DNA of 55,715 nucleotides. It comes from Bigelowiella natans CCMP2755. Taxonomy: Eukaryota > Protista > Cercozoa. Under the pieces are notes generated by a model. It worked only from the letters and a program-made list of their open reading frames with translations, was not told where the DNA came from and did not search any database. This document shows positions 23,911-34,960 of this stretch, one piece after another. The stretch spans positions 1 through 55,715 of the forward strand of contig ADNK01003516.1 of the NCBI GenBank assembly GCA_000320545.1, in the 5' to 3' direction. The number at the start of each line of letters is the position of its first letter. Within the stretch, counting starts at the first letter, position 1. A program made the translations under genes and the position numbers.

Positions 23911-25650
23911 TATTTATCTTTAGAGCTGAGTGGGCAGAGATCAATAAATGCAATATAAACCAAGTTTATTCATTCCTCACACTACTACGATTTGGATTTC
24001 CGTTAATCACAACCTTCTGAAGGGGAAAGACGGTGTACATGTCATCATCCATTCTCCTTTTCCCTTCATCATAAGTAATGATTATCAATTCTTTTATCTT
24101 GTAATCTTCTCACCTCTTGGGAAATTTTCCTCCTCCTCCTCCTCCTCATCTCTTCACTATTATTTCACAAGGGCTACCGTTGTAGCTGTAGATCTAAATA
24201 ACAAGCCAAAAATGTGGGAAAACTTGATAAGCTTCGCACGGAAGACCCCCGGAAGGCTTATAGTACCTGAAAGGGGGATGATGATGACGACGTCAGCACA
24301 CGAAGGAGGAGGAGAATCATATCATGGTCGTCGTCAGAAGAGCTATGCTCGCTACGGAGCTAACTTGCTCACAGATATACCGGAAATCGCCCATTGGCTG
24401 GTTGGTGGTCAAAGAATATGATGATGATGATGATGATGATGATATTATTTGCCGTCAGTTGTTCACTACTAAATCTTACTACTACTAACTCTCCTCCTCA
24501 AACGTCAATGTCAGTCGGTTAGTAGAAATAGTATATCATCCACTTTTGAGGCATATTATATAATATATGATATCATTATCGATATTATCATCCTCATATG
24601 AAGAATCAAAATAATAGAATACTAATAACCTGACCAATTATCATGATAATAAGGCACACAGCGTATGCCCTGGTATTGACTTAACACTCGGGTCATACGC
24701 ATATCTGGATGGAAAAGACTTTGTAATGATGATCTAATCTAGTAGCAACAGAATTAGGGTAAATGTATTTACAGCAGCGTCGTTATATCCGTTGTAGGTT
24801 CGTATTGTGCTAGCAATGGATGCTATATGCAATCACGTGCTCACACATCGGAAATCAAGTACTAGTAACAACACAACAATATTTAAAGTCATCATCGTCT
24901 ATCCTATGTTTTGGGCGAGTAGTTATCTATCTCATTGGATCGTAAAATGATAATACTAGCTTCTCCAACCCCTCCCCCTCCCCCCCCTCCTCCTTCTCCT
25001 CATCACCATCATCATCACCACGCTCCTCTTCCTCCTCTTCCTTAATAATAGGTGGTGCAATCTATGTATTTAATTATCTACATCCGTAGGCAGGGTTAAC
25101 TTAGCATTACTTGTTATTATCTACATCCATAGGCAGAGTTAACTTAGCATTCCTCGCTTCTCCTTCCGATATCTACTTAAGATCAAGAAAGTAGTAGTAG
25201 CAACAGTAGTAATAGGAGGAGCACCACTTGCGTAGATAAAGAACAAGAAGATGAAAAGAAGAAAATCATGTTGAATATTTTCCTACCCTCCTCCTCCCTC
25301 CTCCTTCTTTATATCAACTTCCTCCCTGGACAAATAGATCACGGGATATGTCAGTGAAGAGGTACAAAGACAGAGAGACTTGGGTGAAAGTCATTGAAAA
25401 AGTGAGCGCTGGGGTACTATTTCTTCATTTACTCTTCATCTACAGATGATGACTAAATTGATGATGACGATGATGATGCTGATTGGTACTTCGTGATCTC
25501 CACGGTGCTGCTAGTGCTGCTGGAAATAATATGATGAAAAATTATAAATAATAGGCCTACTGCAAGCCAAATATAACGGGACCTTTGATTCAAGATAAAG
25601 AATTTGATGTGGTGGGTATACATACAAGTGAGCTGTTCGACATATGGTGA

Positions 25651-25681
<31 letters not shown>

Positions 25682-26140
25682 CTCAATAGTGATGATATCA
25701 ATAAGGTTGATGCTAATATTATCAAATGATTATGATGATAGTTATAGTTGGAATTCTTGTTATTGTGTTAATTTATTAGCCCTATTGCTACATAAAACTG
25801 GTTATTTTTTTAATTTGTCGTCTTTATTATTAGGTCGATGCTTCAGTACCGCAGCAAGGTATGGAAGTGCACATACCCGTACATTTGTGTGTGACTTCGT
25901 ACCAAATTGAAGAACATCACAATAAGAAGAGCAAGGAGCACAAATAGCATTACAACGACGCCTCGACGACACTATCAACAAAAACAACAACATTTATTAG
26001 TACTCCTACACAACTAGATCTATTCCACATACTGGATGGATAAACAAATAGGTCCAAATTATTTGCTGGCGAAACGGATTCAACAATGGAGGGCAATTGT
26101 TGCTAGGAGCAAAGGTGAAAAAATAGAAGGAAGGAAGATA

Positions 26141-26172
<32 letters not shown>

Positions 26173-27024
26173 AATGACGTTGATGATACGGGAATGAAAA
26201 CGACGACAAAACAAAAAAACTATCAGGAACTATCATAGTGCCAGTGCTATCAGTTCTTGCACGGCCTTTCTTCTTCTTCTTCTTCTTCTTCTTCTTCACG
26301 CTATTTATCTATCTGTAACATATCACTAGTACTTACTGATTGACTTTGGGATCTAGGTATTCGTGTTTCTATCAATATTGCACCTGCATCTGCCACAGAG
26401 TCAGTCACAAAGGTGCACATGTGCTACATATCTAGATATATGCGATTAAACCTATATACACGTGTGCGTATAATAGTCATCAATATGAAGAAAACGACAA
26501 AGTAACAAGATATAATGCGCCAAGATTTTGTATGCAGAATATGCTAACATTGAGTAAGTGAATCAATCCTCTTACTGTTGTTGCTTTATCACTTCATCAC
26601 TCAGAATCCCGTGTTACGTGCTGCATATGCCGGTGTTTCGTTTTTCCCTCCGACAGAGGTACTGAAGAATCGATATTTCATTGGATCATCTTCGCAATCT
26701 TCACTTCGAATTAAGTATTGTTTTTAACACGTACAGGTTTTTCACCCTACAACAACAAATTCAGTGATGGCAGCAGCTCTGCTCAGAGATATTTTTGACG
26801 AAGATTCCCCTTCGAATCCATCGAAGAAATTGGAGCATCCATTGCTTTTGATATCGGAAGGTGCGTGGCACGGCGGACTCTGGACTACCGCTGTCAGCAA
26901 TAAAAGCAGCGCAGTTGTATCAGCGGGTTTAGGCTTTGTTAAAGAGAAATCACAATATCTCAAACTTGGCGCTGCATTGGGTACAGGATACCTACTGATG
27001 AGAAAGATCAAGTCTAAGTTGTAG
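21976..27024 (+). CDS. Uncharacterised Rossmann-like protein of a conserved hypothetical family, C-terminal PTS1 (SKL)
   Basis: Spliced motifs: GVEWP..|KISTT, EWRQNY, VLGAGAAIGP, ATVVAVDL, GANLLTDIPEIAHWL, LGSYAYLDG, LAFLASPSDIY, IGPNYLLAKRIQQWRA, VSINIAPASATESV and GAWHGGLW; ends KIKSKL*. Confidence 0.8.
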
Positions 27025-27169
27025 TGACGTTCTCAAAGCTGTTGCCATATTCATTGACCGCGGTGGTGCTTGTACGACCTCGGTAATTTCAGAAAAATGA
27101 GATGCGATTCGAAAAATGAGACTGGAAGAGATAGCTAGATGGGTGCGACAAATCGCAAGCTTGTGAAGT

Positions 27170-27560
27170 GCTACCAACTTGTCTTGATGTGAACAACATG
27201 ATGTTGCATTTCGTACTCCAGGGTTCATCATTGTTTCATGCGATCATTGTTGGAAAAATTGAGTTTAGTTGGCTGCGCTAGTGTCATGTCATGGGCTCTG
27301 CAAGTCTGACTATGCGGCGCGACTCGATCGGTGTGCGACGCACATAAAAGCTGCGTTCATTAGCTTTTTGGTCGTCCTGTCAACTAGTCAACAATGTCAA
27401 CTCTGATGCGATGTGCATTGTTGTTTCATCTTCGGGACAGATATACTACTCATTTGCCCTTCAGCAAAGAAGATGCATGTGCACATGCTTCATTATGTGT
27501 ATGTGCACACACATGGATGCACATGTGAAATAACAACGCGGTCGAACACAAGCACAACGT
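27170..27560. other. CATG/TGCA-rich intergenic block at a convergent gene junction
   Basis: gatgcatgtgcacatgc, gtgcacacacatggatgcacatgtg and a residual CpG core gcggcgcgactcgatcggtgtgcgacgc near 27314. Confidence 0.55.
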
Positions 27561-27589
27561 GTAATGTGATTTTTACGCTAATGACTATC

Positions 27590-30500
27590 TTACGAGGCTT
27601 CATGGTACGTATTAAGGCCACAGTTGAATACATCGAGACAGTCATTGGTTTTCCAGTAGGCCTCCTCCTTAGGCAAAATAAATAATGCTATTAAGACTTT
27701 TAGCACGAAATATTATGTATAAATATGTACTTGGTAATGGAGAGGGTCTTCGATGATTGTCTTCTTTACGACCTGAAACTAAAGGTTACCATGGTTTTTA
27801 ATACTCTGAGCAAATTTAGTACCCCGAACGTAATTTTGACTGGTTGATTTTTTAGCTTCTGAAGTTCTGTCACAACAAATCTGGGAAGATGGATCACTTA
27901 TCACATTTTACGCCCTCGCACGCATATTAAAAGGAAGAGTTAAAACATATGGTTACGATACTTCAGTGGGGTATCAGGTTTACTGATATCTACTCCATTG
28001 ATATTGAGGATTCCTGATAAAGGAATTCATTATATCTGTAACGAAATTATTTGAAACAATACATACCTGAGCCTGCAGGAATTCCCTTCGACAAAAGCTC
28101 TGTCAACGTATATAAAATAACTATATTCAATGAGAAAACTGGAAAAATACTGCCAACACACCTGTATTTGTGGTGGGAATACATACGTATCGATAAATGT
28201 TTGATTTCGGTAGATCTCCCTTCCCAGCAACCTTCCGTAATTATCACAATAAATCAACCTTTAGAAGTATGTCACTTGTGTGATGTTGTAACTGATGTTT
28301 TAAATGACCTCAATTCTGAAGCCTAGTGGACGGTTCTTAAAGACAAAATTCTTCTTATGCACCTTCAGCACTCTTTCCTCTGCCTAAAAGAGATAACTAA
28401 ACTGTATATAATTTTACAAAGGTGCTATGCATGTTTGCTTTTATTTCTGGAGAAAACAAGAATCTCTGAAAATTAACCTTTGCTTCAGTATCTGGCAACG
28501 ACTAGCACCCAAAATATGGATATAGAGATTGAGAGCTTTAAATTAGAAGTTGTATCATTTTACTACTCACGTTTGTATTTGATTCAGCTACTCCACTGTT
28601 CGATCGATTCTTTTGACCCTTCAGATTACGTGTTTAATGTTTTTAATTGCAATTTGGTATAACTTGTAACGAGTCTCACATGTTCCTGTTTGTCATCGTC
28701 AATTATCGCTCTCCTCATCTTTCTTTAAGTGGTTAGTACACATTCAAAAAGTAATAAACATGTGTTCATTATGAACCCTTAATCTTTAGTGAGGTACAGT
28801 TTTGATGTCGATATGTTGAATTGTAATTGATCCTCCATCTAAAAATGAAACATGGATCAATGTTTAAATCAAAATGACTATTTGTCCTTAACCTCGCGAA
28901 TGAGAACCCTCAATGCGGTGTGAGATACCTCCTTCGTCTCAGAAATACTATGTAACTGTAAATGAGAAAGTATCAATATAACGAAATTACACATAGGGAA
29001 AAGTCGCACATTTTTCTGCTTCCTAAAAGCTATAGTAGCAAAGAAGATTCCCGATGACAATTCCACTTATTTGCATTCAACAAATATGTAAGACGTGAAT
29101 ACTTCATATTTTTAACAAATTCTACCGGTATTATTAACACAACAAGTGTACTCGTCGGAAACCTTTAGGATCTGTATGAGCACAGAGTAATTATCTATTG
29201 TAGGACTGTACTTCTAAGCTGATACTTTCATTTCTGGCTGATTAGCAACTCCGAGACGTGAAACCGAGTAGTCGCTGAGGACTGTGTAGGCTCTTTTCTT
29301 TGTGTTTCGTTGAAAAATATGTTAGTTGTTTTGCATCTAACACCCAAAAAAAGATTTCAAAATCACCTTTGGGTTTTCGGAGCCTAATAATTGGAATTCT
29401 GATGTCCTGATAGTTGCATAGGAGCATAGGAGTTCAGTTTACAAAATGGGAAGGCCTCGTAGATAACAATACTCTTTCTGCTCATTGATCTTGTGTGAGA
29501 TAGAATGAAGAGATGCCTAGGAGGGAATAATTTTACTGTTCTTAAAATGTAGACTGCAAGAACTTCACCTCGTATCCTTCCAAGACGAGTTCACACTCCT
29601 ACATATTATTAAATCATTAAATGAGTCTCAAAAGTATATTATATCTGAAGGCAGGTAAAACCTTGTTTCTATGAATAAAGACTCCACCGACATTAGCCTC
29701 CACATTTTTGGACATCATCTCCTTCAAATTCAGTTAAGAAAAATTATAAATTTACATCTGCGAAGTGTGACATCCTCTTTTATACTACTTTTCCAATCTT
29801 ATGGGCAACTTCTCCATTCTCGACGCAAAACCTTACATCACTAAATTCGAATCAGGATGATGAATGAAAATGTAAAGTTACACCTGAAATGGATTCGAGA
29901 GATATTATCGGGTGTGCTACTTTTAATTTCATTCTGAAAATCAGGAGATTTTGCAAGAACCATGCCTGTAACATCGATGCACAATGCACATATTGTTATT
30001 ATTAACAGGGTTTTCTAACTTATTCTCACCGCCCCATTTTGAGTAGAATCTTGAGAGAGGAAATCTGTGGACCAAAAAAAATACCTTTAGATTCAACTAC
30101 AAGAAAGATTCACTCTAACAACTCAAGTACTCTTCTCGTTCAATGATGAAATTCCCGTGCCTTGTGTCTTGGGCAATTTTCTATTTCATTAAACAAGTTT
30201 TATGAAGGAATATCAAAAAGATTTTTTTGGAAAGCTAGACATTGACAAGAGAGTTGACAGATAGGTAACGGCCTTCGAGTATCTGAATTACAAGTTCTTG
30301 AATAATTTTATGCGAGAGATTATTTTTGGTGGATACCTGTCGAATTTCACGTGTTTTCCAATTTACCCTAAATCCAGCAACAAATCAATACTTTCATATT
30401 TGATCGCAAAAGAAGGCTTTGTTTACCACAAAGCACCACCAACATCGATGCTTTTATTGAACGAATTCGAGCTTGATATTATTTTCTCAATAGCTTCCAT

Positions 30501-30752
30501 ATGAACATATCTTCGCAACTATAATAACAAGCTAATGAATAAAATTGATACAAGAGGACCAAAGAGCATTTTGATGCAGATAGTACCTTCGAGCGATATG
30601 TTAGACGAAACCATTCTACGTTGGTAGGAAATGGGAATTGGGATATCTACTTATCCACAAAATGAACAGTAAGTACCTTTTCCAGTCAGATATCCAGGCA
30701 TGAACCTTGGGCCTACGCCTGAGTGCTTTTCGCTTGAGCCGCAAATCCCCAT
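27590..30752 (-). CDS. BLUF-BLUF(degenerate)-PDZ protein, paralogue A (~28 short exons, N-terminal MGICGS acylation motif)
   Basis: Spliced: MGICGSSEKHSGVGPRFMPGYLTGK|EWFRLTYRSK|LRRYVHMEAIEKIISSSNSFNKSIDVGGALW|VNWKTREIRQ|ILEGRYLSVNSLVN|KIAQDTRHGNFIIERE|EFPLSRFYSKWG|GMVL (BLUF) ... KNFVFKNRPLGFRIE ... ELLSKGIPAGS|GILNINGVDIS ... QPVKITFG (PDZ) ... NDCLDVFNCGLNTYHEAS*. All introns used are GT-AG with consistent phases. Confidence 0.88.
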
Positions 30753-31199
30753 TTGAGCTTGTGGGATATGATAGACTAGAATCTACACTCTTCTATTTGA
30801 GTGACCATCAGGCCATGCTACCTTGTGCATGTCAAAGTGAGGGGTAGGGTTAGTTCACAAGCTTGAAAGTACCTCTTAAGTACAACAAATAAATTGCGGA
30901 ATAGAACAAACTCTAATAACCCAATATTTCGCTATGCTTGTCCTTTTGGATATGCGACAAGACTATCTCACCCTTTTGTGCGCTTTTGCCTCAAGAATAT
31001 ACTTTAAAAACTTCAATGGTGACACGTTCCTTCGTTTCCTTCGGCATGAGCGAGCTTATTGGTCCCGTCCCGGATCTTTTCGGTATTTCGTTGAACTGCT
31101 CTTTGTTCTTCACTGTTGCTCAAAATCCACACCCCTCGAGGTACAGCTATTGAAGAAGCAAGGTGAAAATTAAATTTTGTTCCCTGTTGTGCAGGATCC
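30753..31199. promoter_or_regulatory. Putative bidirectional promoter/5' UTR region between the two BLUF-PDZ paralogues
   Basis: 447 bp between the divergent ATGs at 30752 (-) and 31200 (+). Position only; no motif identified. Confidence 0.5.
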
Positions 31200-34100
31200 A
31201 TGGGAATTTGCAACTCGAGTAATCATCACGGATTGGGTCCAAGGTTTATGCCTGCTTCGCTTACAGGGAAAGGTAAGATTTTGCCTTGCTGTGAAATTTC
31301 TCGAAGAAACCACAAGCCGTTTTTCACATTTTCTAGAATGGTTCCGTTTGACATACCGTTCAAAGGTAATTACAATTTTTCATAAATCACCTATGTCAAA
31401 TCATAAATATTAGTTCTTCTTCGTATGTAGTTGCAAAGCTATGTATCGATGGAAAGTATAGAAAGGATCATCAAAATCTCGGACAAAAATAACAAAGCCA
31501 TAGACGTTGGTGGTGCTTTGTGGTAATGACAAACATCTTTAACTCCCTGTTCTCTCTCATGGTTCCAAACTTTCCATTGCATTTAGGGTCGATATGAATA
31601 CAAGAGAAATCCGACAGGTGGGCTTCCGATAAATTCAATTAAGAATCTGATTTTTGGTTTCCGAAGATTCTTGAAGGGCGTTATCTTGCAGTGAATTCTC
31701 TTGTAAATGTCAGTAGTCATTTATATAATTTGATCAAGGGAACTCTCAAACGTTCTCAAACGTTACCTTTCACTATCAGAAAATTGCTCAAGACAGAAGG
31801 CACAAACATTTTGTTATCGAACGAGAAGAGTAAATAGCTTTAATCAAATTATGTTTCAAGATACTTAAAATTAACTCGCAAACAACGTGTGCTGAAGGTT
31901 TCCTCTCTCAAGATTCTATTCTAAATGGGGAGGTAAACAGATCCACTATCTACCATTTGAAATTAGAATTGCCTTGTGTTGCATAGGAATGGCACTTGCA
32001 CAGTCGCCTGATTTTCAACAGAACATCGAAAACAAAATTCAGCAATCTCTTGTAAGATCCCATTACGGGTAGGTGGCCAATATTTTAGTTCAAAATCATT
32101 GGGTTAGTTCTGAAATCTTCCATTCTACTTCACGCAAGTTATATAATGGCTAATATGGTCCAGATTTGTGGTCACCGATGAGAGAGTATCCGACGAGATA
32201 GCCAATGTAAATTATTACAACTCTCAAACATTTGCAAACCTGAAGCAATTTATTAATTGATCTAGCTCATGATAAGCAAGAACGTTAATTTAAATATTGG
32301 AGGGATCTTTATTTATCGGAAAAAGGTTTGATTTTCAAATGTAAATTAAGATATGGGTACTCAAAAATTAACATTGAGATTATACCAGGATTGTGAACTT
32401 ATAATGGAAGGAGATAAGGTCAGATTCAGATTGGTATTGCAATTATGTGGCAAAAAATAATTATTTTGCAGAAATCTGTTGAGGCTATATCACGCAAAAT
32501 CAACGAACTGAAAGAGTTAAATTTATTTGTCGTATACCAGACAATGCATAACTTTTGTTCTTTTCGTAAATAGAACAACAGAATTTCGATTGCTCGGGAC
32601 TGAAAGACCTAATGTATTTTACGTAAAATTATACACATATGTGTATATACACATATACAATGTGCATCTATGTCAAAACGACAATTATTCCAACTTTAGA
32701 CACGGTCCTACACGGTTCTTAGCGAGTTTTCTGTAGCTCGCCTTGCTCTCGCAGATCAGCCAGAGATGCAGGTAACTAGAATCAACATACATTTAAAGTA
32801 TTTTTAATAAGATATTATCTTGCAGATAAAAAATGTTGCTGAAGACTACAATTGTGTTGTAAATAATACTGGTCTGGCTAACACGTTCAAAATAAGAAAA
32901 CCTGCCATACATCATTGTTGTTTGAATATTTAGCCATCCATTGTCTACTTCCCCTAATTTCGCTTGTATTATGTTACTTGTTGTGATAAAGTTGAAATGT
33001 TCACTGGAATCTTCTTCGCGACGTTGAACTTCAGAGGATACGAGGTTTTTCGGTTTGAATTTGGGAAACACAAGTTTTATGATTACTGTACTACATCAGA
33101 ACCGATTCCAATCCGATTCACATGAATACAGCACTCCTCTAAGGACTTTGATACGTGAGGTGTAGTATTTGTTAAAAGCTAGTATTGATCCTCTTTTTCA
33201 GCATAATGTTTATATTTGTATTGTCAGATGGAAGATCAATTCCAATTCAATATTAGCACGTCAAAATTGTATTCCTAAAACATTCTTCCATTTCTCGTTA
33301 GATTTGCTAAATTATTTTTCATATATCTAGGAAGATGAATAGATCTATGAATCAGGTGAATGAAAAGCATGAAAGCAATTTGAGTTCACCCATAAACTTA
33401 AAAATTATTTCAGCAAGGGGATAGTAAGAAAGAATCAAATGTTCAACGTTCAAGTTTTTCAAATACTTCGATGAATACAAATGTATGTTTGAGATACGCT
33501 TACCATGATAATAAACCTACGAATTCACTTTGACTATCTTTTAGGCTGAGCCAGGACTCGAGGAGGGTTCGGTGAGATATAGCTGTATTTCCAATAAAAT
33601 TGATTTTTGTAAGTAAAATGTACGTAGGTTCAATGTGAGAAAAGAGTCTCAAAACTGAAGAAAAAATCCTTCACATTCAAAAACCGCCCACTTGGGTTTC
33701 GAATTGAGGTACAAATATCCACACTTGTTGGGAAAGCAGTACTATACTCACTTCTTATATGTTAAATTCTCAGGTTGCGGGAAGTGGAAACCTCCCAAAA
33801 TCGGACAAGTTCAGATATGTGTGCATTCCTACAACAAACACTGGTCAACACACTGCTAAATATTAAACGAAATGTAAATGATATAATTTCATCTGTTACA
33901 ATAGAAATGTTATCCAAAGGAATTCCTCCTGGTTCTGGTATTATCCGTCTCTGTAATAGAAAAAAATAGTGGTTGAATTCAGAAAAAAATGTTGCAAGGT
34001 ATTCTCGAAATCAATGGAGTGGACATCAGCGATCCGAATACTCAATTAAAGTTCTTTGAATTACAAGGGATTATAACAACAATAAATTGATTGATTAAAT

Positions 34101-34377
34101 AATATAAATTCTTCCAGATTCGTGATTGCTGAACTTCAAAAATCAAAAGACAAACCGGTGGACATAACATTTGGGGTAATCCTTACATCGTCATTGTCAA
34201 ATCACCTTTCAGAACACACATGTACTATTATTGTCGATTTGAAAGGTTGTAAAAAAAGTTCTCCCTGAGGGTCAACTTAGACAGGTAAAGCACAATGCAG
34301 AATTTTTCCTCGAATATGTGTTCACAAAATCTTTGTGAAAGGAAAATGATTGCCTTCTTCCTGGCTGCGCTTCTTGA
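31200..34377 (+). CDS. BLUF-BLUF(degenerate)-PDZ protein, paralogue B (~28 short exons, ~470 aa, N-terminal MGICNS acylation motif)
   Basis: Spliced: MGICNSSNHHGLGPRFMPASLTGK|EWFRLTYRSK|LQSYVSMESIERIIKISDKNNKAIDVGGALW|VDMNTREIRQ|ILEGRYLAVNSLVN|KIAQDRRHKHFVIERE|EFPLSRFYSKWG|GMAL (BLUF Tyr, Asn, Gln, DxRH, Trp and Met present) ... KSFTFKNRPLGFRIE ... EMLSKGIPPGS|GILEINGVDIS ... KPVDITFG (PDZ) ... ENDCLLPGCAS*. Confidence 0.88.
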
Positions 34378-34499
34378 GATCACCAGGTTACAGTTCGAGC
34401 AATGAAATCAACTACGCTGTCTGCCATGTCGCCCAAAAATAGATCAGGTGTTGAATCCTGGTAATTAACACATGAAGAAAATAGACGATCCTGCACTAC

Positions 34500-34960
34500 G
34501 CATGGCTGATGAGGAAGCTGTTCAGATCAAGTCATTGTTCATTTTGCCAGCTAGCGAAGGACTCGCGCATCCATCTGATTCTCTTTGTTTGTTCAACTCT
34601 GCTGTATTTCCCATCTCCTGTTCCGAAGAATTCCTGATCTAGCATGCAAAAATGAACACGCACCTTGCTAGCTTGTGAACACCAATGAAAACGGTGCGAC
34701 GAGTTGAGATGCATGTACATGCATGCTAGCATGCACCATTCGAAACGAGGCTGCAGCATGATCGATGACATCTCATGCAGGGCTAGAGGGGCAGCACTGT
34801 CATGGTGCACTCCTACGCACATGCATGCATCGCATTCTAGCATTGCATCATCACACACAGCTCTCAATGTTCACATTGTGGTCAAATGTTGCGACATGCA
34901 CTGTTGAAAGCGTGGCCGACAATGCCCCATTATTACCTAGCGCTACGTGCATGAGATGAT
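34500..34960. other. CATG/TGCA/CTAG-rich intergenic block at a convergent gene junction
   Basis: 16-bp palindrome TGCATGCTAGCATGCA at 34720-34735, many GCTAGC/ATGCAT words and residual actcgcgc near 34561. Confidence 0.7.

What the first reader, a model, noticed from the sequence alone, without database searches (positions are those of the whole stretch)
27590..34377. Hidden pair of membrane-anchored BLUF-PDZ photoreceptor genes, a candidate undescribed eukaryotic blue-light signalling system
Seen in sequence: this 6.8-kb region has no long ORF because each gene is cut into ~28 exons of about 8-31 codons. Splicing at GT-AG sites gives two ~470-490-aa paralogues with the architecture MGICxS - BLUF1 - BLUF2-like - linker - PDZ. 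BLUF1 (RLTYRSK...S..xN..IDVGGAL...RQILEG...V..LVNKIAQDxRH...RFYSKWGGM) keeps the residues equivalent to AppA Tyr21, Ser41, Asn45, Gln63, DRRH, Trp104 and Met106. Established knowledge: these residues bind flavin and support the BLUF photocycle. The C-terminal domain has PDZ hallmarks (RPLGF carboxylate loop, G-IL-INGVD, P-V-I-F). The well-characterised eukaryotic BLUF proteins I know are photoactivated adenylyl cyclases (Euglena PAC, Naegleria PAC) or short BLUF proteins; I do not know a BLUF-PDZ scaffold. Inference: a lipid-anchored light sensor that switches PDZ binding to a membrane partner such as a channel, for phototaxis or photoshock, and a possible optogenetic tool.
Basis: partly seen in the sequence, partly recalled or inferred. 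Interest (0 to 1): 0.93.

Follow-up and report, generated by a model that had tools for sequence, protein, structure and literature searches.

The report
Lipid-anchored tandem-BLUF light sensors with PDZ tail
Two back-to-back, heavily spliced genes of the marine alga Bigelowiella natans encode probably membrane-anchored proteins that join a flavin blue-light sensor (BLUF) to a PDZ protein-docking domain, a combination I found in no paper, which would be a new way for a cell to pass on a light signal.

Summary
Window 27590-34377 carries two head-to-head paralogues. Gene A is on the minus strand (30752-27590, 484 aa). Gene B is on the plus strand (31200-34377, 470 aa). Each has 28 exons of 24-92 nt, all 27 introns are GT-AG, and intron phases are the same in both genes. 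All 15 RNA-contig junctions listed match the models. Public transcript ORFs match them at 99.5-100%.

Pfam finds two BLUF domains (78 bits). BLUF1 keeps the photocycle Tyr, Asn and Gln, plus Trp and Met spaced W-G-G-M. BLUF2 lacks the Gln in every family member.

The C-terminal domain misses Pfam's PDZ cut-off (15-16 bits). However, its confident predicted fold matches only canonical PDZ domains (Z up to 10.9), and the PLGF loop is invariant. The start (MGIC.S) fits N-myristoylation plus S-acylation.

The genome holds a third paralogue, and Amorphochlora amoebiformis has an orthologue. Non-synonymous divergence is far below saturated synonymous divergence, so selection is purifying.

I found no paper on a natural BLUF-PDZ protein or on BLUF in chlorarachniophytes. 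Flavin binding, a photocycle, lipidation and any PDZ ligand are untested. Correct splicing of gene A around exon 5 is not documented.

Earlier scan notes list other BLUF genes in this genome, none with a PDZ. Verdict: a new variant of a known kind.

The parts
27590..30752 (-). Gene A coding region: 28 exons, 484 aa (acyl motif, BLUF1, BLUF2, middle region, linker, PDZ, Cys-containing tail)
   Evidence: Model. Ten RNA joints match it. An X2 loose end supports intron 28384-28477. MMETSP ORFs P0012, P0001, P0015 and P0027 match at 99-100%. The JGI model Bigna1/91967 is partial.
31200..34377 (+). Gene B coding region: 28 exons, 470 aa, same architecture
   Evidence: Model. Five RNA joints match it. 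P0022 (residues 1-189) and P0024 (161-470) match without gaps. P0020 is a complete ORF lacking only exon 20.
30753..31199 (.). 447-bp spacer between the two start codons, holding both 5' UTRs and a presumed shared divergent promoter
   Evidence: RNA contigs of gene A reach 30851. Those of gene B start by 30999, with a 5'-UTR joint at 31138/31193. Promoter function is inferred.
31200..31217 (+). Gene B N-terminus M-G-I-C-N-S: N-myristoylation consensus (Gly2, Ser6) with Cys4 for S-acylation
   Evidence: Read from the sequence. Gly2 with Ser/Ala at position 6 is kept in gene A, Amorphochlora P0023 and the metagenomic P0025. Lipidation itself is not tested.
30735..30752 (-). Gene A N-terminus M-G-I-C-G-S: the same acylation motif
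31339..31997 (+). Gene B BLUF1 (residues 26-121, exons 2-8), with the photocycle residues kept
   Evidence: Pfam BLUF best stretch is 27-116 on profile positions 2-89 of 92. The alignment to bPAC pairs the Tyr, Ser, Asn and Gln. Foldseek matches the AppA BLUF domain with TM 0.81.
29955..30613 (-). Gene A BLUF1 (residues 27-122, exons 2-8)
   Evidence: 79% identical to B's BLUF1, with pN 0.13 against pS 0.68. P0012 scores 32.3 bits on Pfam BLUF.
30241..30282 (-). Gene A exon 5 (14 aa of the BLUF1 core), skipped or followed by a retained intron in every assembled transcript I saw
   Evidence: Eight MMETSP ORFs have a 14-aa gap here. P0012 ends in retained intron 5. RNA contigs run unbroken over 30131-30282.
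32046..32726 (+). Gene B BLUF2 (residues 138-226, exons 8-14): degenerate BLUF
   Evidence: It is the second Pfam BLUF stretch. The internal alignment puts Leu where BLUF1 has Gln, and Leu/Phe where BLUF1 has Trp/Met.
29271..29906 (-). Gene A BLUF2 (residues 139-227)
   Evidence: P0015 alone scores 26.5 bits, E 7.1e-6, on Pfam BLUF profile positions 19-87.
32763..33349 (+). Gene B conserved middle region (residues 239-314): predicted beta segment and long helix of unknown role
   Evidence: AlphaFold secondary structure, with pLDDT mostly below 50. Conserved across the family.
33350..33639 (+). Gene B Ser/Asn-rich linker, including cassette exon 20 (33414-33482)
   Evidence: 31% identity between A and B here. 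Exon 20 is absent from P0020 and P0026 and present in P0024.
33640..34257 (+). Gene B PDZ domain (residues 353-450, exons 22-27)
   Evidence: Pfam PDZ gives E 0.013-0.027 at 15-16 bits on profile positions 8-75 of 81, below the cut-off. The five introns 33709-34245 are RNA-confirmed.
27758..28374 (-). Gene A PDZ domain (residues 353-450)
   Evidence: AlphaFold model of P0027 residues 56-154 has pLDDT 80-91. The Foldseek top 50 are all PDZ. The VIA wide top 50 are all PDZ, with Z up to 10.9. ESM-feature neighbours are all PDZ.
34258..34377 (+). Gene B C-terminal tail, ending ...NDCLLPGCAS plus the stop codon
   Evidence: P0024 confirms it.
27590..27757 (-). Gene A C-terminal tail, with the NDCL motif and ending ...HEAS plus the stop codon
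   Evidence: P0027 is 100% identical.

Best explanation
The region holds two divergently transcribed, anciently duplicated nuclear genes of the chlorarachniophyte Bigelowiella natans.

Shown here: each gene is spliced from 28 tiny exons and is expressed. Each encodes about 470-484 aa with five parts: (i) an N-terminal Met-Gly-Ile-Cys start that fits the N-myristoylation plus S-acylation consensus; (ii) a BLUF domain with the Tyr-Gln-Met photocycle residues; (iii) a second BLUF domain that has lost the Gln and the Trp/Met in all relatives; (iv) a conserved middle segment and a variable Ser/Asn-rich linker; (v) a canonical-type PDZ domain followed by a short Cys-containing tail.

Inferred: the protein sits on the cytoplasmic face of a membrane. 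BLUF1 binds flavin and undergoes the usual blue-light hydrogen-bond switch. BLUF2 acts as a non-photochemical partner or relay for BLUF1. The PDZ domain docks the sensor to the C-terminus of a partner protein. Light then changes either that docking or the behaviour of the docked partner. This would put in one chain what short bacterial BLUF proteins do through separate binding partners.
For: Gene models and expression: 28 exons in each gene, all introns GT-AG, with shared intron phases. All 15 listed RNA joints match. Transcript ORFs P0022, P0024, P0027 and P0012 are 99.5-100% identical without gaps.

Organism: source names jgi/Bigna1/91967 and /76099.

BLUF: 78.4 bits, E 4.6e-22, in two stretches. 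BLUF2 alone scores 26.5 bits. phmmer hits bPAC at E 7e-8 and AppA at 3e-5, with Tyr, Ser, Asn and Gln aligned. Foldseek matches the AppA BLUF domain with TM 0.81.

PDZ: the model has pLDDT 80-91. The Foldseek top 50 are all PDZ, led by Shank1 at E 4.7e-4 and TM 0.65-0.70. In the VIA wide search, 68 chains reach Z of at least 8 and the top 50 are all PDZ: ZO-1 at Z 10.9, CNK2 at Z 10.7 with rmsd 2.1 over 81 residues. The sub-threshold Pfam PDZ hit sits in the right register. The P-L-G-F-R loop and the G-S-x-I-L-x-x-N motif are invariant. ESM-feature neighbours are all PDZ.

Selection: pN is 0.13-0.15 against pS of 0.7-0.9 in BLUF1 and PDZ, while introns are unalignable.

Conservation: a third paralogue on C2067 and a 486-aa Amorphochlora orthologue with the same layout.
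Against: No biochemical fact is known: no flavin binding, no photocycle, no lipidation, no ligand. The PDZ call fails Pfam's gathering score. Gene A's tail gives no Pfam or PDB sequence hit. The call therefore rests on a model built from a 5-sequence alignment.

The Met sits three residues after the Trp (W-G-G-M) rather than two, and the effect of this spacing is unknown. Inter-domain geometry is not predicted (pTM 0.37). For gene A, no assembled transcript joins exon 5 to exon 6, or runs cleanly through exons 14-17. A full-length gene A protein is therefore inferred from conservation only.
Confidence: 0.6

Rival explanations
1. Light-independent scaffold. BLUF1 no longer binds flavin or no longer photocycles, as BLUF2 has already stopped doing. 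The protein would then be simply a membrane-anchored PDZ adaptor built on a BLUF-fold body.
For: BLUF2 shows that this family tolerates degenerate BLUF domains. The W-G-G-M spacing differs from the W-x-M of bPAC and AppA. The Ser41 equivalent is Ala in Amorphochlora, P0025 and P0028.
Against: The Tyr, the flavin-contacting Asn, the Gln, D-x-R-H and W-G-G-M are kept in BLUF1 of all five relatives, although those proteins are only 36-40% identical overall. BLUF1 is also the most constrained part of the protein (pN 0.13).
Confidence: 0.12
2. The PDZ is an intramolecular latch. It binds the protein's own Cys-containing C-terminal tail in the dark and is freed by light (auto-inhibition), rather than being constitutively open.
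For: The tails of A, B and Amorphochlora all end in small residue-Ser and carry conserved Cys and N-D-C-L-type motifs.
Against: A C-terminal Ser is not a usual PDZ ligand ending (established knowledge of PDZ ligand classes). In the AlphaFold model the tail (residues 155-187) has pLDDT 27-37 and is not docked. The third paralogue ends differently. The complex test could not be run.
Confidence: 0.12
3. The C-terminal domain has the PDZ fold but does not read C-terminal peptides. It might instead bind membrane lipid or mediate oligomerisation, with the light output going elsewhere.
For: The domain falls below the Pfam PDZ threshold. It has an unusual invariant I-P-T-T-N-T-E segment and a long beta2-beta3 loop. 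No His stands at the start of helix 2, as read from the sequence.
Against: The carboxylate-binding loop (basic residues followed by P-L-G-F) is invariant. The closest structures are all peptide-binding PDZ domains.
Confidence: 0.12
4. Only gene B makes a working receptor. Gene A is mostly spliced unproductively, as a regulated or decaying copy.
For: All gene A transcript ORFs either skip exon 5, retain intron 5 (Val then stop), skip exons 15 and 16, or retain intron 15.
Against: Gene A's exon 5 is 13/14 identical to B's, and exons 15-16 are conserved, while synonymous sites are saturated. Those exons must therefore be translated. 36 of the 51 RNA joints were not listed, so correct splicing may be among them. 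De Bruijn assemblies of tiny exons are error-prone.
Confidence: 0.25

Closest known systems
Euglena photoactivated adenylyl cyclase (PAC alpha/beta)
   Same: It is a eukaryotic flavin blue-light receptor with two BLUF domains in one chain, used for photobehaviour of a flagellate (PMC2781859).
   Different: PAC's output is two class III adenylyl cyclase domains. Pfam finds no cyclase here. These proteins have a PDZ and an N-terminal acylation motif instead, and the second BLUF lacks the photocycle Gln.
Bacterial bPAC / OaPAC and AppA BLUF domains (PDB 5m27, 4yus, 2iyg)
   Same: These are the best sequence and fold matches for BLUF1. The Tyr, Ser, Asn and Gln align, and the fold is beta-alpha-beta-beta-alpha-beta-beta.
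   Different: They are bacterial and soluble, and their outputs are a cyclase or the PpsR-binding SCHIC domain. They have W-x-M where these proteins have W-G-G-M.
Short BLUF proteins that signal through partners (PixD/Slr1694-PixE, PapB, BlsA)
   Same: They carry no enzyme output. The signal passes by light-dependent protein-protein contacts (established knowledge). PixD is a fold match.
   Different: In those systems the partner binds the BLUF domain itself. Here a dedicated docking domain (PDZ) and a lipid anchor are fused in the same chain.
Canonical eukaryotic PDZ scaffolds (Shank, ZO-1, CNK, Scribble, MAGI)
   Same: The predicted fold and the carboxylate-binding loop match. Those proteins organise membrane signalling complexes by binding C-termini of channels and receptors.
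   Different: None of them carries a photosensor. This PDZ is too divergent for the Pfam threshold and has its own invariant I-P-T-T-N-T-E segment.
Helmchrome (LOV + RGS) of stramenopile swarmers, and engineered LOV-PDZ optogenetic pairs
   Same: A flavin blue-light sensor is joined to a signalling or docking module in a flagellated alga (PMC8017926). Engineered LOV/PDZ tools show that light control of PDZ binding is workable (reviews found).
   Different: Those use LOV, not BLUF. Helmchrome's partner domain is RGS. The LOV-PDZ pairs are artificial.
Other BLUF genes of the same genome noted earlier in this scan (stand-alone acylated BLUF, tandem BLUF, kinase-BLUF)
   Same: Same organism, the same tiny-exon gene style, and an N-terminal acylation motif in some of them.
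   Different: None was reported with a PDZ. Exon searches find this PDZ in only three loci of the genome.

Membership tests
BLUF domain (Pfam PF04940) | Significant match to the family profile above the curated cut-off (25 bits) | tested here: met
   P0020 (the gene B transcript) scores 78.4 bits, E 4.6e-22, in two stretches. P0022 scores 66 bits. P0015 (gene A's BLUF2 alone) scores 26.5 bits. P0023 scores 87.6 bits. Single exons taken by reference are underpowered (E 0.12).
BLUF domain (Pfam PF04940) | Ferredoxin-like beta-alpha-beta-beta-alpha-beta-beta fold | tested here: met
   The AlphaFold model of P0020 shows this order of elements twice, at pLDDT 52-82. Foldseek matches the AppA BLUF domain (2iyg) with TM 0.81 at 26% identity, plus PixD and bPAC. 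This rests on a predicted structure, not a solved one.
BLUF domain (Pfam PF04940) | Photocycle triad: Tyr on strand 1, Gln on strand 3, Met on strand 5 | tested here: inconclusive
   In BLUF1, Tyr and Gln align with bPAC Tyr7 and Gln49 and are kept in all five relatives. The Met is present but as W-G-G-M, one residue further from the Trp than in bPAC or AppA. In BLUF2, Gln is replaced by Leu, Val, Ile or Met in all members, Tyr is not conserved, and Trp/Met are lost.
BLUF domain (Pfam PF04940) | Non-covalent flavin binding and a light-induced red shift | not testable with these tools
   Needs purified protein and spectroscopy.
PDZ domain (Pfam PF00595) | Match to the family profile above the curated cut-off (23.2 bits) | tested here: not met
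   Gene B's tail scores 15.3-16.3 bits, E 0.013-0.027, on profile positions 8-75 of 81. Gene A's tail and Amorphochlora give no hit. phmmer against PDB sequences finds no PDZ.
PDZ domain (Pfam PF00595) | Six-stranded beta sandwich with two helices in canonical (non-permuted) order | tested here: met
   In the P0027 model, residues 56-154 have pLDDT 80-91 with elements in the order E E E H E E H E. The Foldseek top 50 are all PDZ. In VIA wide, 68 chains reach Z of at least 8, the top 50 are all PDZ, and the best Z is 10.9. This rests on a predicted structure.
PDZ domain (Pfam PF00595) | Carboxylate-binding loop (basic residue, then hydrophobic-Gly-hydrophobic) before strand 2 | tested here: met
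   K-N-R-P-L-G-F-R is present, and P, L, G, F and R are invariant in the five aligned tails.
PDZ domain (Pfam PF00595) | Binding of a C-terminal or internal peptide ligand | not testable with these tools
   No ligand is known.
N-myristoylated / S-acylated proteins | Met-Gly start, an allowed residue at position 3, a small residue (Ser, Thr, Ala, Gly, Cys or Asn) at position 6, and a nearby Cys for palmitate | tested here: met
   The starts are M-G-I-C-N-S (B), M-G-I-C-G-S (A), M-G-C-C-A-S (P0025) and M-G-A-S-D-S (Amorphochlora, no Cys). The third paralogue's JGI model starts M-T-P and ends C-L-S-L instead. This is a motif only.
N-myristoylated / S-acylated proteins | Demonstrated lipid attachment and membrane localisation | not testable with these tools
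   Needs metabolic labelling or imaging.
Photoactivated adenylyl cyclase (PAC) | BLUF fused to a class III nucleotide cyclase domain | tested here: not met
   Pfam reports no cyclase family in P0020, P0023, P0028 or any fragment at E up to 1. These proteins are not PACs.

The most novel reading that the evidence does not exclude
This would be the first natural photoreceptor whose output module is a PDZ domain. A dual-acylated BLUF sensor at the plasma or flagellar membrane of a rhizarian alga would gain or lose PDZ grip on the C-terminus of a channel, transporter or cyclase under blue light. Light would then assemble or dissolve a membrane signalling complex directly. It would also provide a ready-made light-gated peptide-binding pair for optogenetics.
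Probability: 0.3. Interest if true: 0.85.

Novelty: new variant of a known kind. Interest (0 to 1): 0.66.

Why it matters
In the papers I could search, BLUF photoreceptors of eukaryotes appear almost only as photoactivated adenylyl cyclases. A 2026 review of algal light sensing lists BLUF proteins only for stramenopiles and green algae, with cyclic-nucleotide outputs (PMC13436692). A conserved, expressed family in chlorarachniophytes that couples BLUF to a PDZ docking domain and a lipid anchor would add a new output logic: light-controlled scaffolding at a membrane. It would extend BLUF signalling to Rhizaria. It would also give photobiologists a compact natural module (about 100 aa of sensor plus about 100 aa of PDZ) to test as an optogenetic binder. 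Finally, it shows that genes built of 8-30-codon exons are poorly represented here. The public models recovered for this family are partial or doubtful at the ends, and the PDZ was not recognised in any of them.

Tried and rejected
Exon-by-exon searches by reference were too weak to decide anything. Pfam on ten exons gave only BLUF at E 0.12 for B exon 3. PDB phmmer with that exon gave bPAC at E 0.55 among chance hits.

Public transcript proteins that match the models (P ids) were used for Pfam, PDB, folding and Atlas searches instead.

phmmer of gene A's tail against PDB sequences gave only a flagellar hook-associated protein at E 0.38, which I take as chance. P0015 against PDB gave no BLUF hit.

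The representatives search also returned three giant repetitive proteins (P0002-P0004) that match through 11-17-residue stretches. I judged these spurious.

The homologue search with the Amorphochlora protein returned only itself, so the spread of the family across other chlorarachniophyte genera is unknown.

PAC membership is rejected because there is no cyclase domain. I had remembered helmchrome as a BLUF protein, but it is LOV plus RGS.

Short repeats near 26900-27070 that resemble exon 3 (D3, D6, I9) were considered as a possible extra BLUF exon. I judged them chance, since no BLUF-like frame is open there.

Two Atlas calls failed before the third worked. No supplementary tables are held for the B. 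natans diurnal RNA-seq paper, so I could not check day/night expression.


Full report
**What is in the sequence**

The window is contig C221 of a 91-Mb eukaryotic assembly. Region 27590-34377 has no ORF longer than about 90 aa. Translating the minus strand of 27500-30800 and comparing it with the plus strand of 31150-34450 gave a colinear series of short conserved peptide blocks.

A frame- and GT-AG-constrained path search between these blocks gave two complete models.
- Gene B runs 31200-34377 on the plus strand. It has 28 exons of 25-92 nt, 27 introns of 49-120 nt, and encodes 470 aa.
- Gene A runs 30752-27590 on the minus strand. It has 28 exons of 24-92 nt, introns of 50-94 nt, and encodes 484 aa.

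All introns are GT-AG. Nineteen exons have the same length in both genes and the others differ by multiples of three, so every intron phase is shared. The proteins are 63% identical. The two start codons are 447 bp apart, head to head. Nucleotide similarity between the copies is confined to exons (inverted repeats I1-I7). The introns align no better than shuffled sequence (0.55 against 0.51).

**Expression and correctness of the models**

Runs labelled with the organism hold 20-31% of the region's 31-mers, as expected for spliced RNA. Laying four runs on 28390-34389 (6000 bases) gave 51 joints. The 15 listed are all CT..AC in gene A and GT..AG in gene B, and they coincide base for base with model introns. 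A loose end in run X2 supports one more gene A intron (28384-28477).

A profile of exon 3 from both genes, given by reference, found an MMETSP transcript ORF of gene A (P0001, 80.8 bits). Its cluster and homologues supply independent checks:
- P0022 equals gene B residues 1-189 (99.5%, no gaps).
- P0024 equals B 161-470 (99.7%, no gaps).
- P0027 equals A 298-484 (100%).
- P0012 equals A 1-90 (100%).

Source names jgi/Bigna1/91967 and jgi/Bigna1/76099 identify the organism as Bigelowiella natans. This confirms what earlier scan notes had said. The B. natans genome averages 8.8 exons of 159 bp per gene (figures quoted in PMC12730881), so these genes are about three times more fragmented than usual.

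The joined protein models were never sent to a database, folding or family tool. I joined exons only inside scripts, and used the matching public transcript proteins by their ids for all searches.

**Domains**

Exon-by-exon searches are underpowered (BLUF E 0.12). On the transcript proteins, Pfam BLUF is unambiguous: 78.4 bits, E 4.6e-22, two stretches in P0020 (gene B). The first stretch covers profile positions 2-89 of 92. BLUF2 of gene A alone scores 26.5 bits.

phmmer against PDB sequences hits bPAC (E 7e-8), AppA and OaPAC. The bPAC alignment pairs the query Tyr of R-L-T-Y-R-S with Tyr7, and its Ser and Asn with the flavin-pocket Ser and Asn. It also pairs the Gln of I-R-Q-I-L-E-G with Gln49. 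The strand-5 motif is W-G-G-M where bPAC has W-A-M.

Across gene A, gene B, the third paralogue, Amorphochlora and a metagenomic relative, the Tyr, the second Asn, the Gln and D-x-R-H are kept. W-G-G-M is kept in four of these; the JGI model of the third paralogue (P0028) reads W-G-A-S, while a six-frame read of that locus gives W-G-G before a probable intron. The Ser is kept only in the two B. natans window genes.

BLUF2 has Leu, Val, Ile or Met in place of the Gln in every member. It has no conserved Tyr, and it has Leu/Phe in place of Trp/Met. It is therefore a conserved, photochemically dead BLUF fold. The AlphaFold model of P0020 shows two beta-alpha-beta-beta-alpha-beta-beta units. Foldseek matches them to AppA (TM 0.81), PixD and the PACs.

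**The C-terminal domain**

Pfam PDZ reaches only 15-16 bits (E 0.013-0.027, cut-off 23.2) in gene B's tail and nothing in gene A's. PDB sequence search finds no PDZ. By sequence criteria, membership is therefore not met.

An AlphaFold model of gene A's tail (P0027, with four relatives as the alignment) has pLDDT 80-91 over residues 56-154, with PDZ topology. Three further results agree:
- Foldseek's top 50 PDB matches are all PDZ domains, led by Shank1 (E 4.7e-4, TM 0.65-0.70), Scribble and NHERF.
- An independent all-against-representatives structural search gives 68 chains with Z of at least 8, and the top 50 are all PDZ. The best are ZO-1 PDZ1 at Z 10.9 and CNK2 at Z 10.7 with rmsd 2.1 over 81 residues.
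- Language-model feature neighbours are all PDZ clusters, with scores of 0.90-0.93.

The carboxylate-binding loop (basic residues followed by P-L-G-F-R) and the G-S-x-I-L-x-x-N motif are invariant in the five tails. I take the domain to be a divergent canonical-type PDZ, with about 0.9 confidence.

**Other parts**

The N-termini fit the N-myristoylation consensus: M-G-I-C-N-S, M-G-I-C-G-S, M-G-C-C-A-S in the metagenomic relative, and M-G-A-S-D-S in Amorphochlora. Three of the four have a nearby Cys for S-acylation. This is a motif, not a demonstration.

Between BLUF2 and the linker lies a conserved segment that is predicted with low confidence as strands plus a long helix. The Ser/Asn-rich linker is the least conserved part, at 31% identity. 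In gene B it contains a cassette exon (exon 20) that is absent from P0020 and P0026. The tails after the PDZ carry an N-D-C-L-type motif and end in Ala-Ser or Cys-Ser.

**Selection and family**

In BLUF1 and the PDZ, non-synonymous divergence is 0.13-0.15 per site while synonymous sites are saturated (0.68-0.92). The duplication is therefore old, and both copies have been kept by selection.

Exon searches of the whole genome find this PDZ at only three loci: A, B and C2067. The C2067 gene (JGI 76099, P0028, 559 aa) has the same layout with fewer, larger exons. Its model starts M-T-P and ends C-L-S-L, a CaaX-like box.

Amorphochlora amoebiformis encodes a 486-aa orthologue (P0023, 36-37% identity over the full length). 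It spreads over 6.2 kb with many exons and is annotated only as a hypothetical protein with BLUF.

**An unresolved point**

Every gene A transcript ORF I could see has one of four splicing defects:
- it lacks exon 5 (14 residues of the BLUF1 core);
- it stops in retained intron 5 (Val, then stop);
- it lacks exons 15 and 16;
- it retains intron 15.

The RNA contigs run unbroken across 30131-30282 and 29010-29297. Those exons are strongly conserved, so they must be translated. 36 joints were not listed. High alternative splicing in B. natans has been reported and disputed (PMC6142364). Gene B has clean end-to-end support.

**How it probably works**

Shown: an expressed and conserved chain made of an acylation motif, an intact BLUF, a dead BLUF, a linker and a PDZ.

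Inferred from established BLUF and PDZ biology: the protein is tethered to a membrane. BLUF1 binds flavin and undergoes the Tyr-Gln-flavin hydrogen-bond switch, which moves strand 5. BLUF2 and the following segment relay this movement. The PDZ holds the C-terminus of a membrane partner, so that light alters either the docking or the partner.

Rivals are a light-blind scaffold, a tail-latched PDZ, a PDZ fold that does not bind peptides, and unproductive splicing of gene A.

**Novelty**

Full-text searches found no natural protein that combines the two domains (BLUF with PDZ). They also found nothing on BLUF in this lineage (BLUF with Bigelowiella, chlorarachniophyte, Rhizaria, Amorphochlora or myristoylation). 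The co-occurrences of BLUF and PDZ are optogenetics reviews about engineered LOV-PDZ pairs.

Reviews describe eukaryotic BLUF proteins as PACs (PMC2781859) or list them only for stramenopiles and green algae (PMC13436692). Earlier notes of this scan report other BLUF genes in this genome, none with a PDZ.

I rate this a new variant of a known kind, namely a BLUF photoreceptor with a new output or docking module and anchor. It is of real interest to photobiology, but it rests entirely on computation.

Noticed in passing
window 30131-30282 (-) and 29010-29297 (-): Gene A exon 5 is skipped, or intron 5 is retained (Val then stop), in all assembled transcripts I saw. Exons 15 and 16 are likewise skipped, or intron 15 is retained. 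This may be regulated unproductive splicing or an assembly artefact.
   Followed up: partly
window 33414-33482 (+): Gene B exon 20 (23 aa of the Ser/Asn-rich linker) behaves as a cassette exon. It is present in P0024 and absent from P0020 and P0026.
   Followed up: partly
L017 3100-8873 (G000:C2067, about 24100-29900): A third BLUF-BLUF-PDZ paralogue (JGI Bigna1/76099, 559 aa) has larger exons and a much longer linker. Its model lacks the Met-Gly start but ends in a CaaX-like C-L-S-L, which hints at a different membrane anchor. RNA has not verified the model ends.
   Followed up: partly
window 27593-27757 (-), 34258-34374 (+): The tails after the PDZ keep an N-D-C-L-type motif with further Cys residues. 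They end in Ala-Ser (A and B) or Cys-Ser (Amorphochlora). The role is unknown; S-acylation or PDZ self-binding are possibilities.
   Followed up: no
L001:1303-2241 (G000:C3421): An intron-free 313-aa ORF carries a single full BLUF domain (70 bits). It is one of at least eight other BLUF loci in this genome.
   Followed up: partly
window 27470-27530, 32620-32660, 34700-34960: CA/TG-rich tracts of the CACATGTGCA type lie just beyond both 3' ends and inside gene B intron 13. The read tool skipped 32629-32659 as a repeat.
   Followed up: no
window 26134-26187: A short GAT trinucleotide array, possibly a poly-Asp coding stretch of a neighbouring gene.
   Followed up: no
L018 8001-14201 (Amorphochlora amoebiformis BAAHQB010000105.1): The orthologue spans 6.2 kb for 486 aa. 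It is not arranged head to head with a paralogue. Its neighbours are a 238-aa protein without a family, an ankyrin-repeat protein and a PX-kinase.
   Followed up: partly
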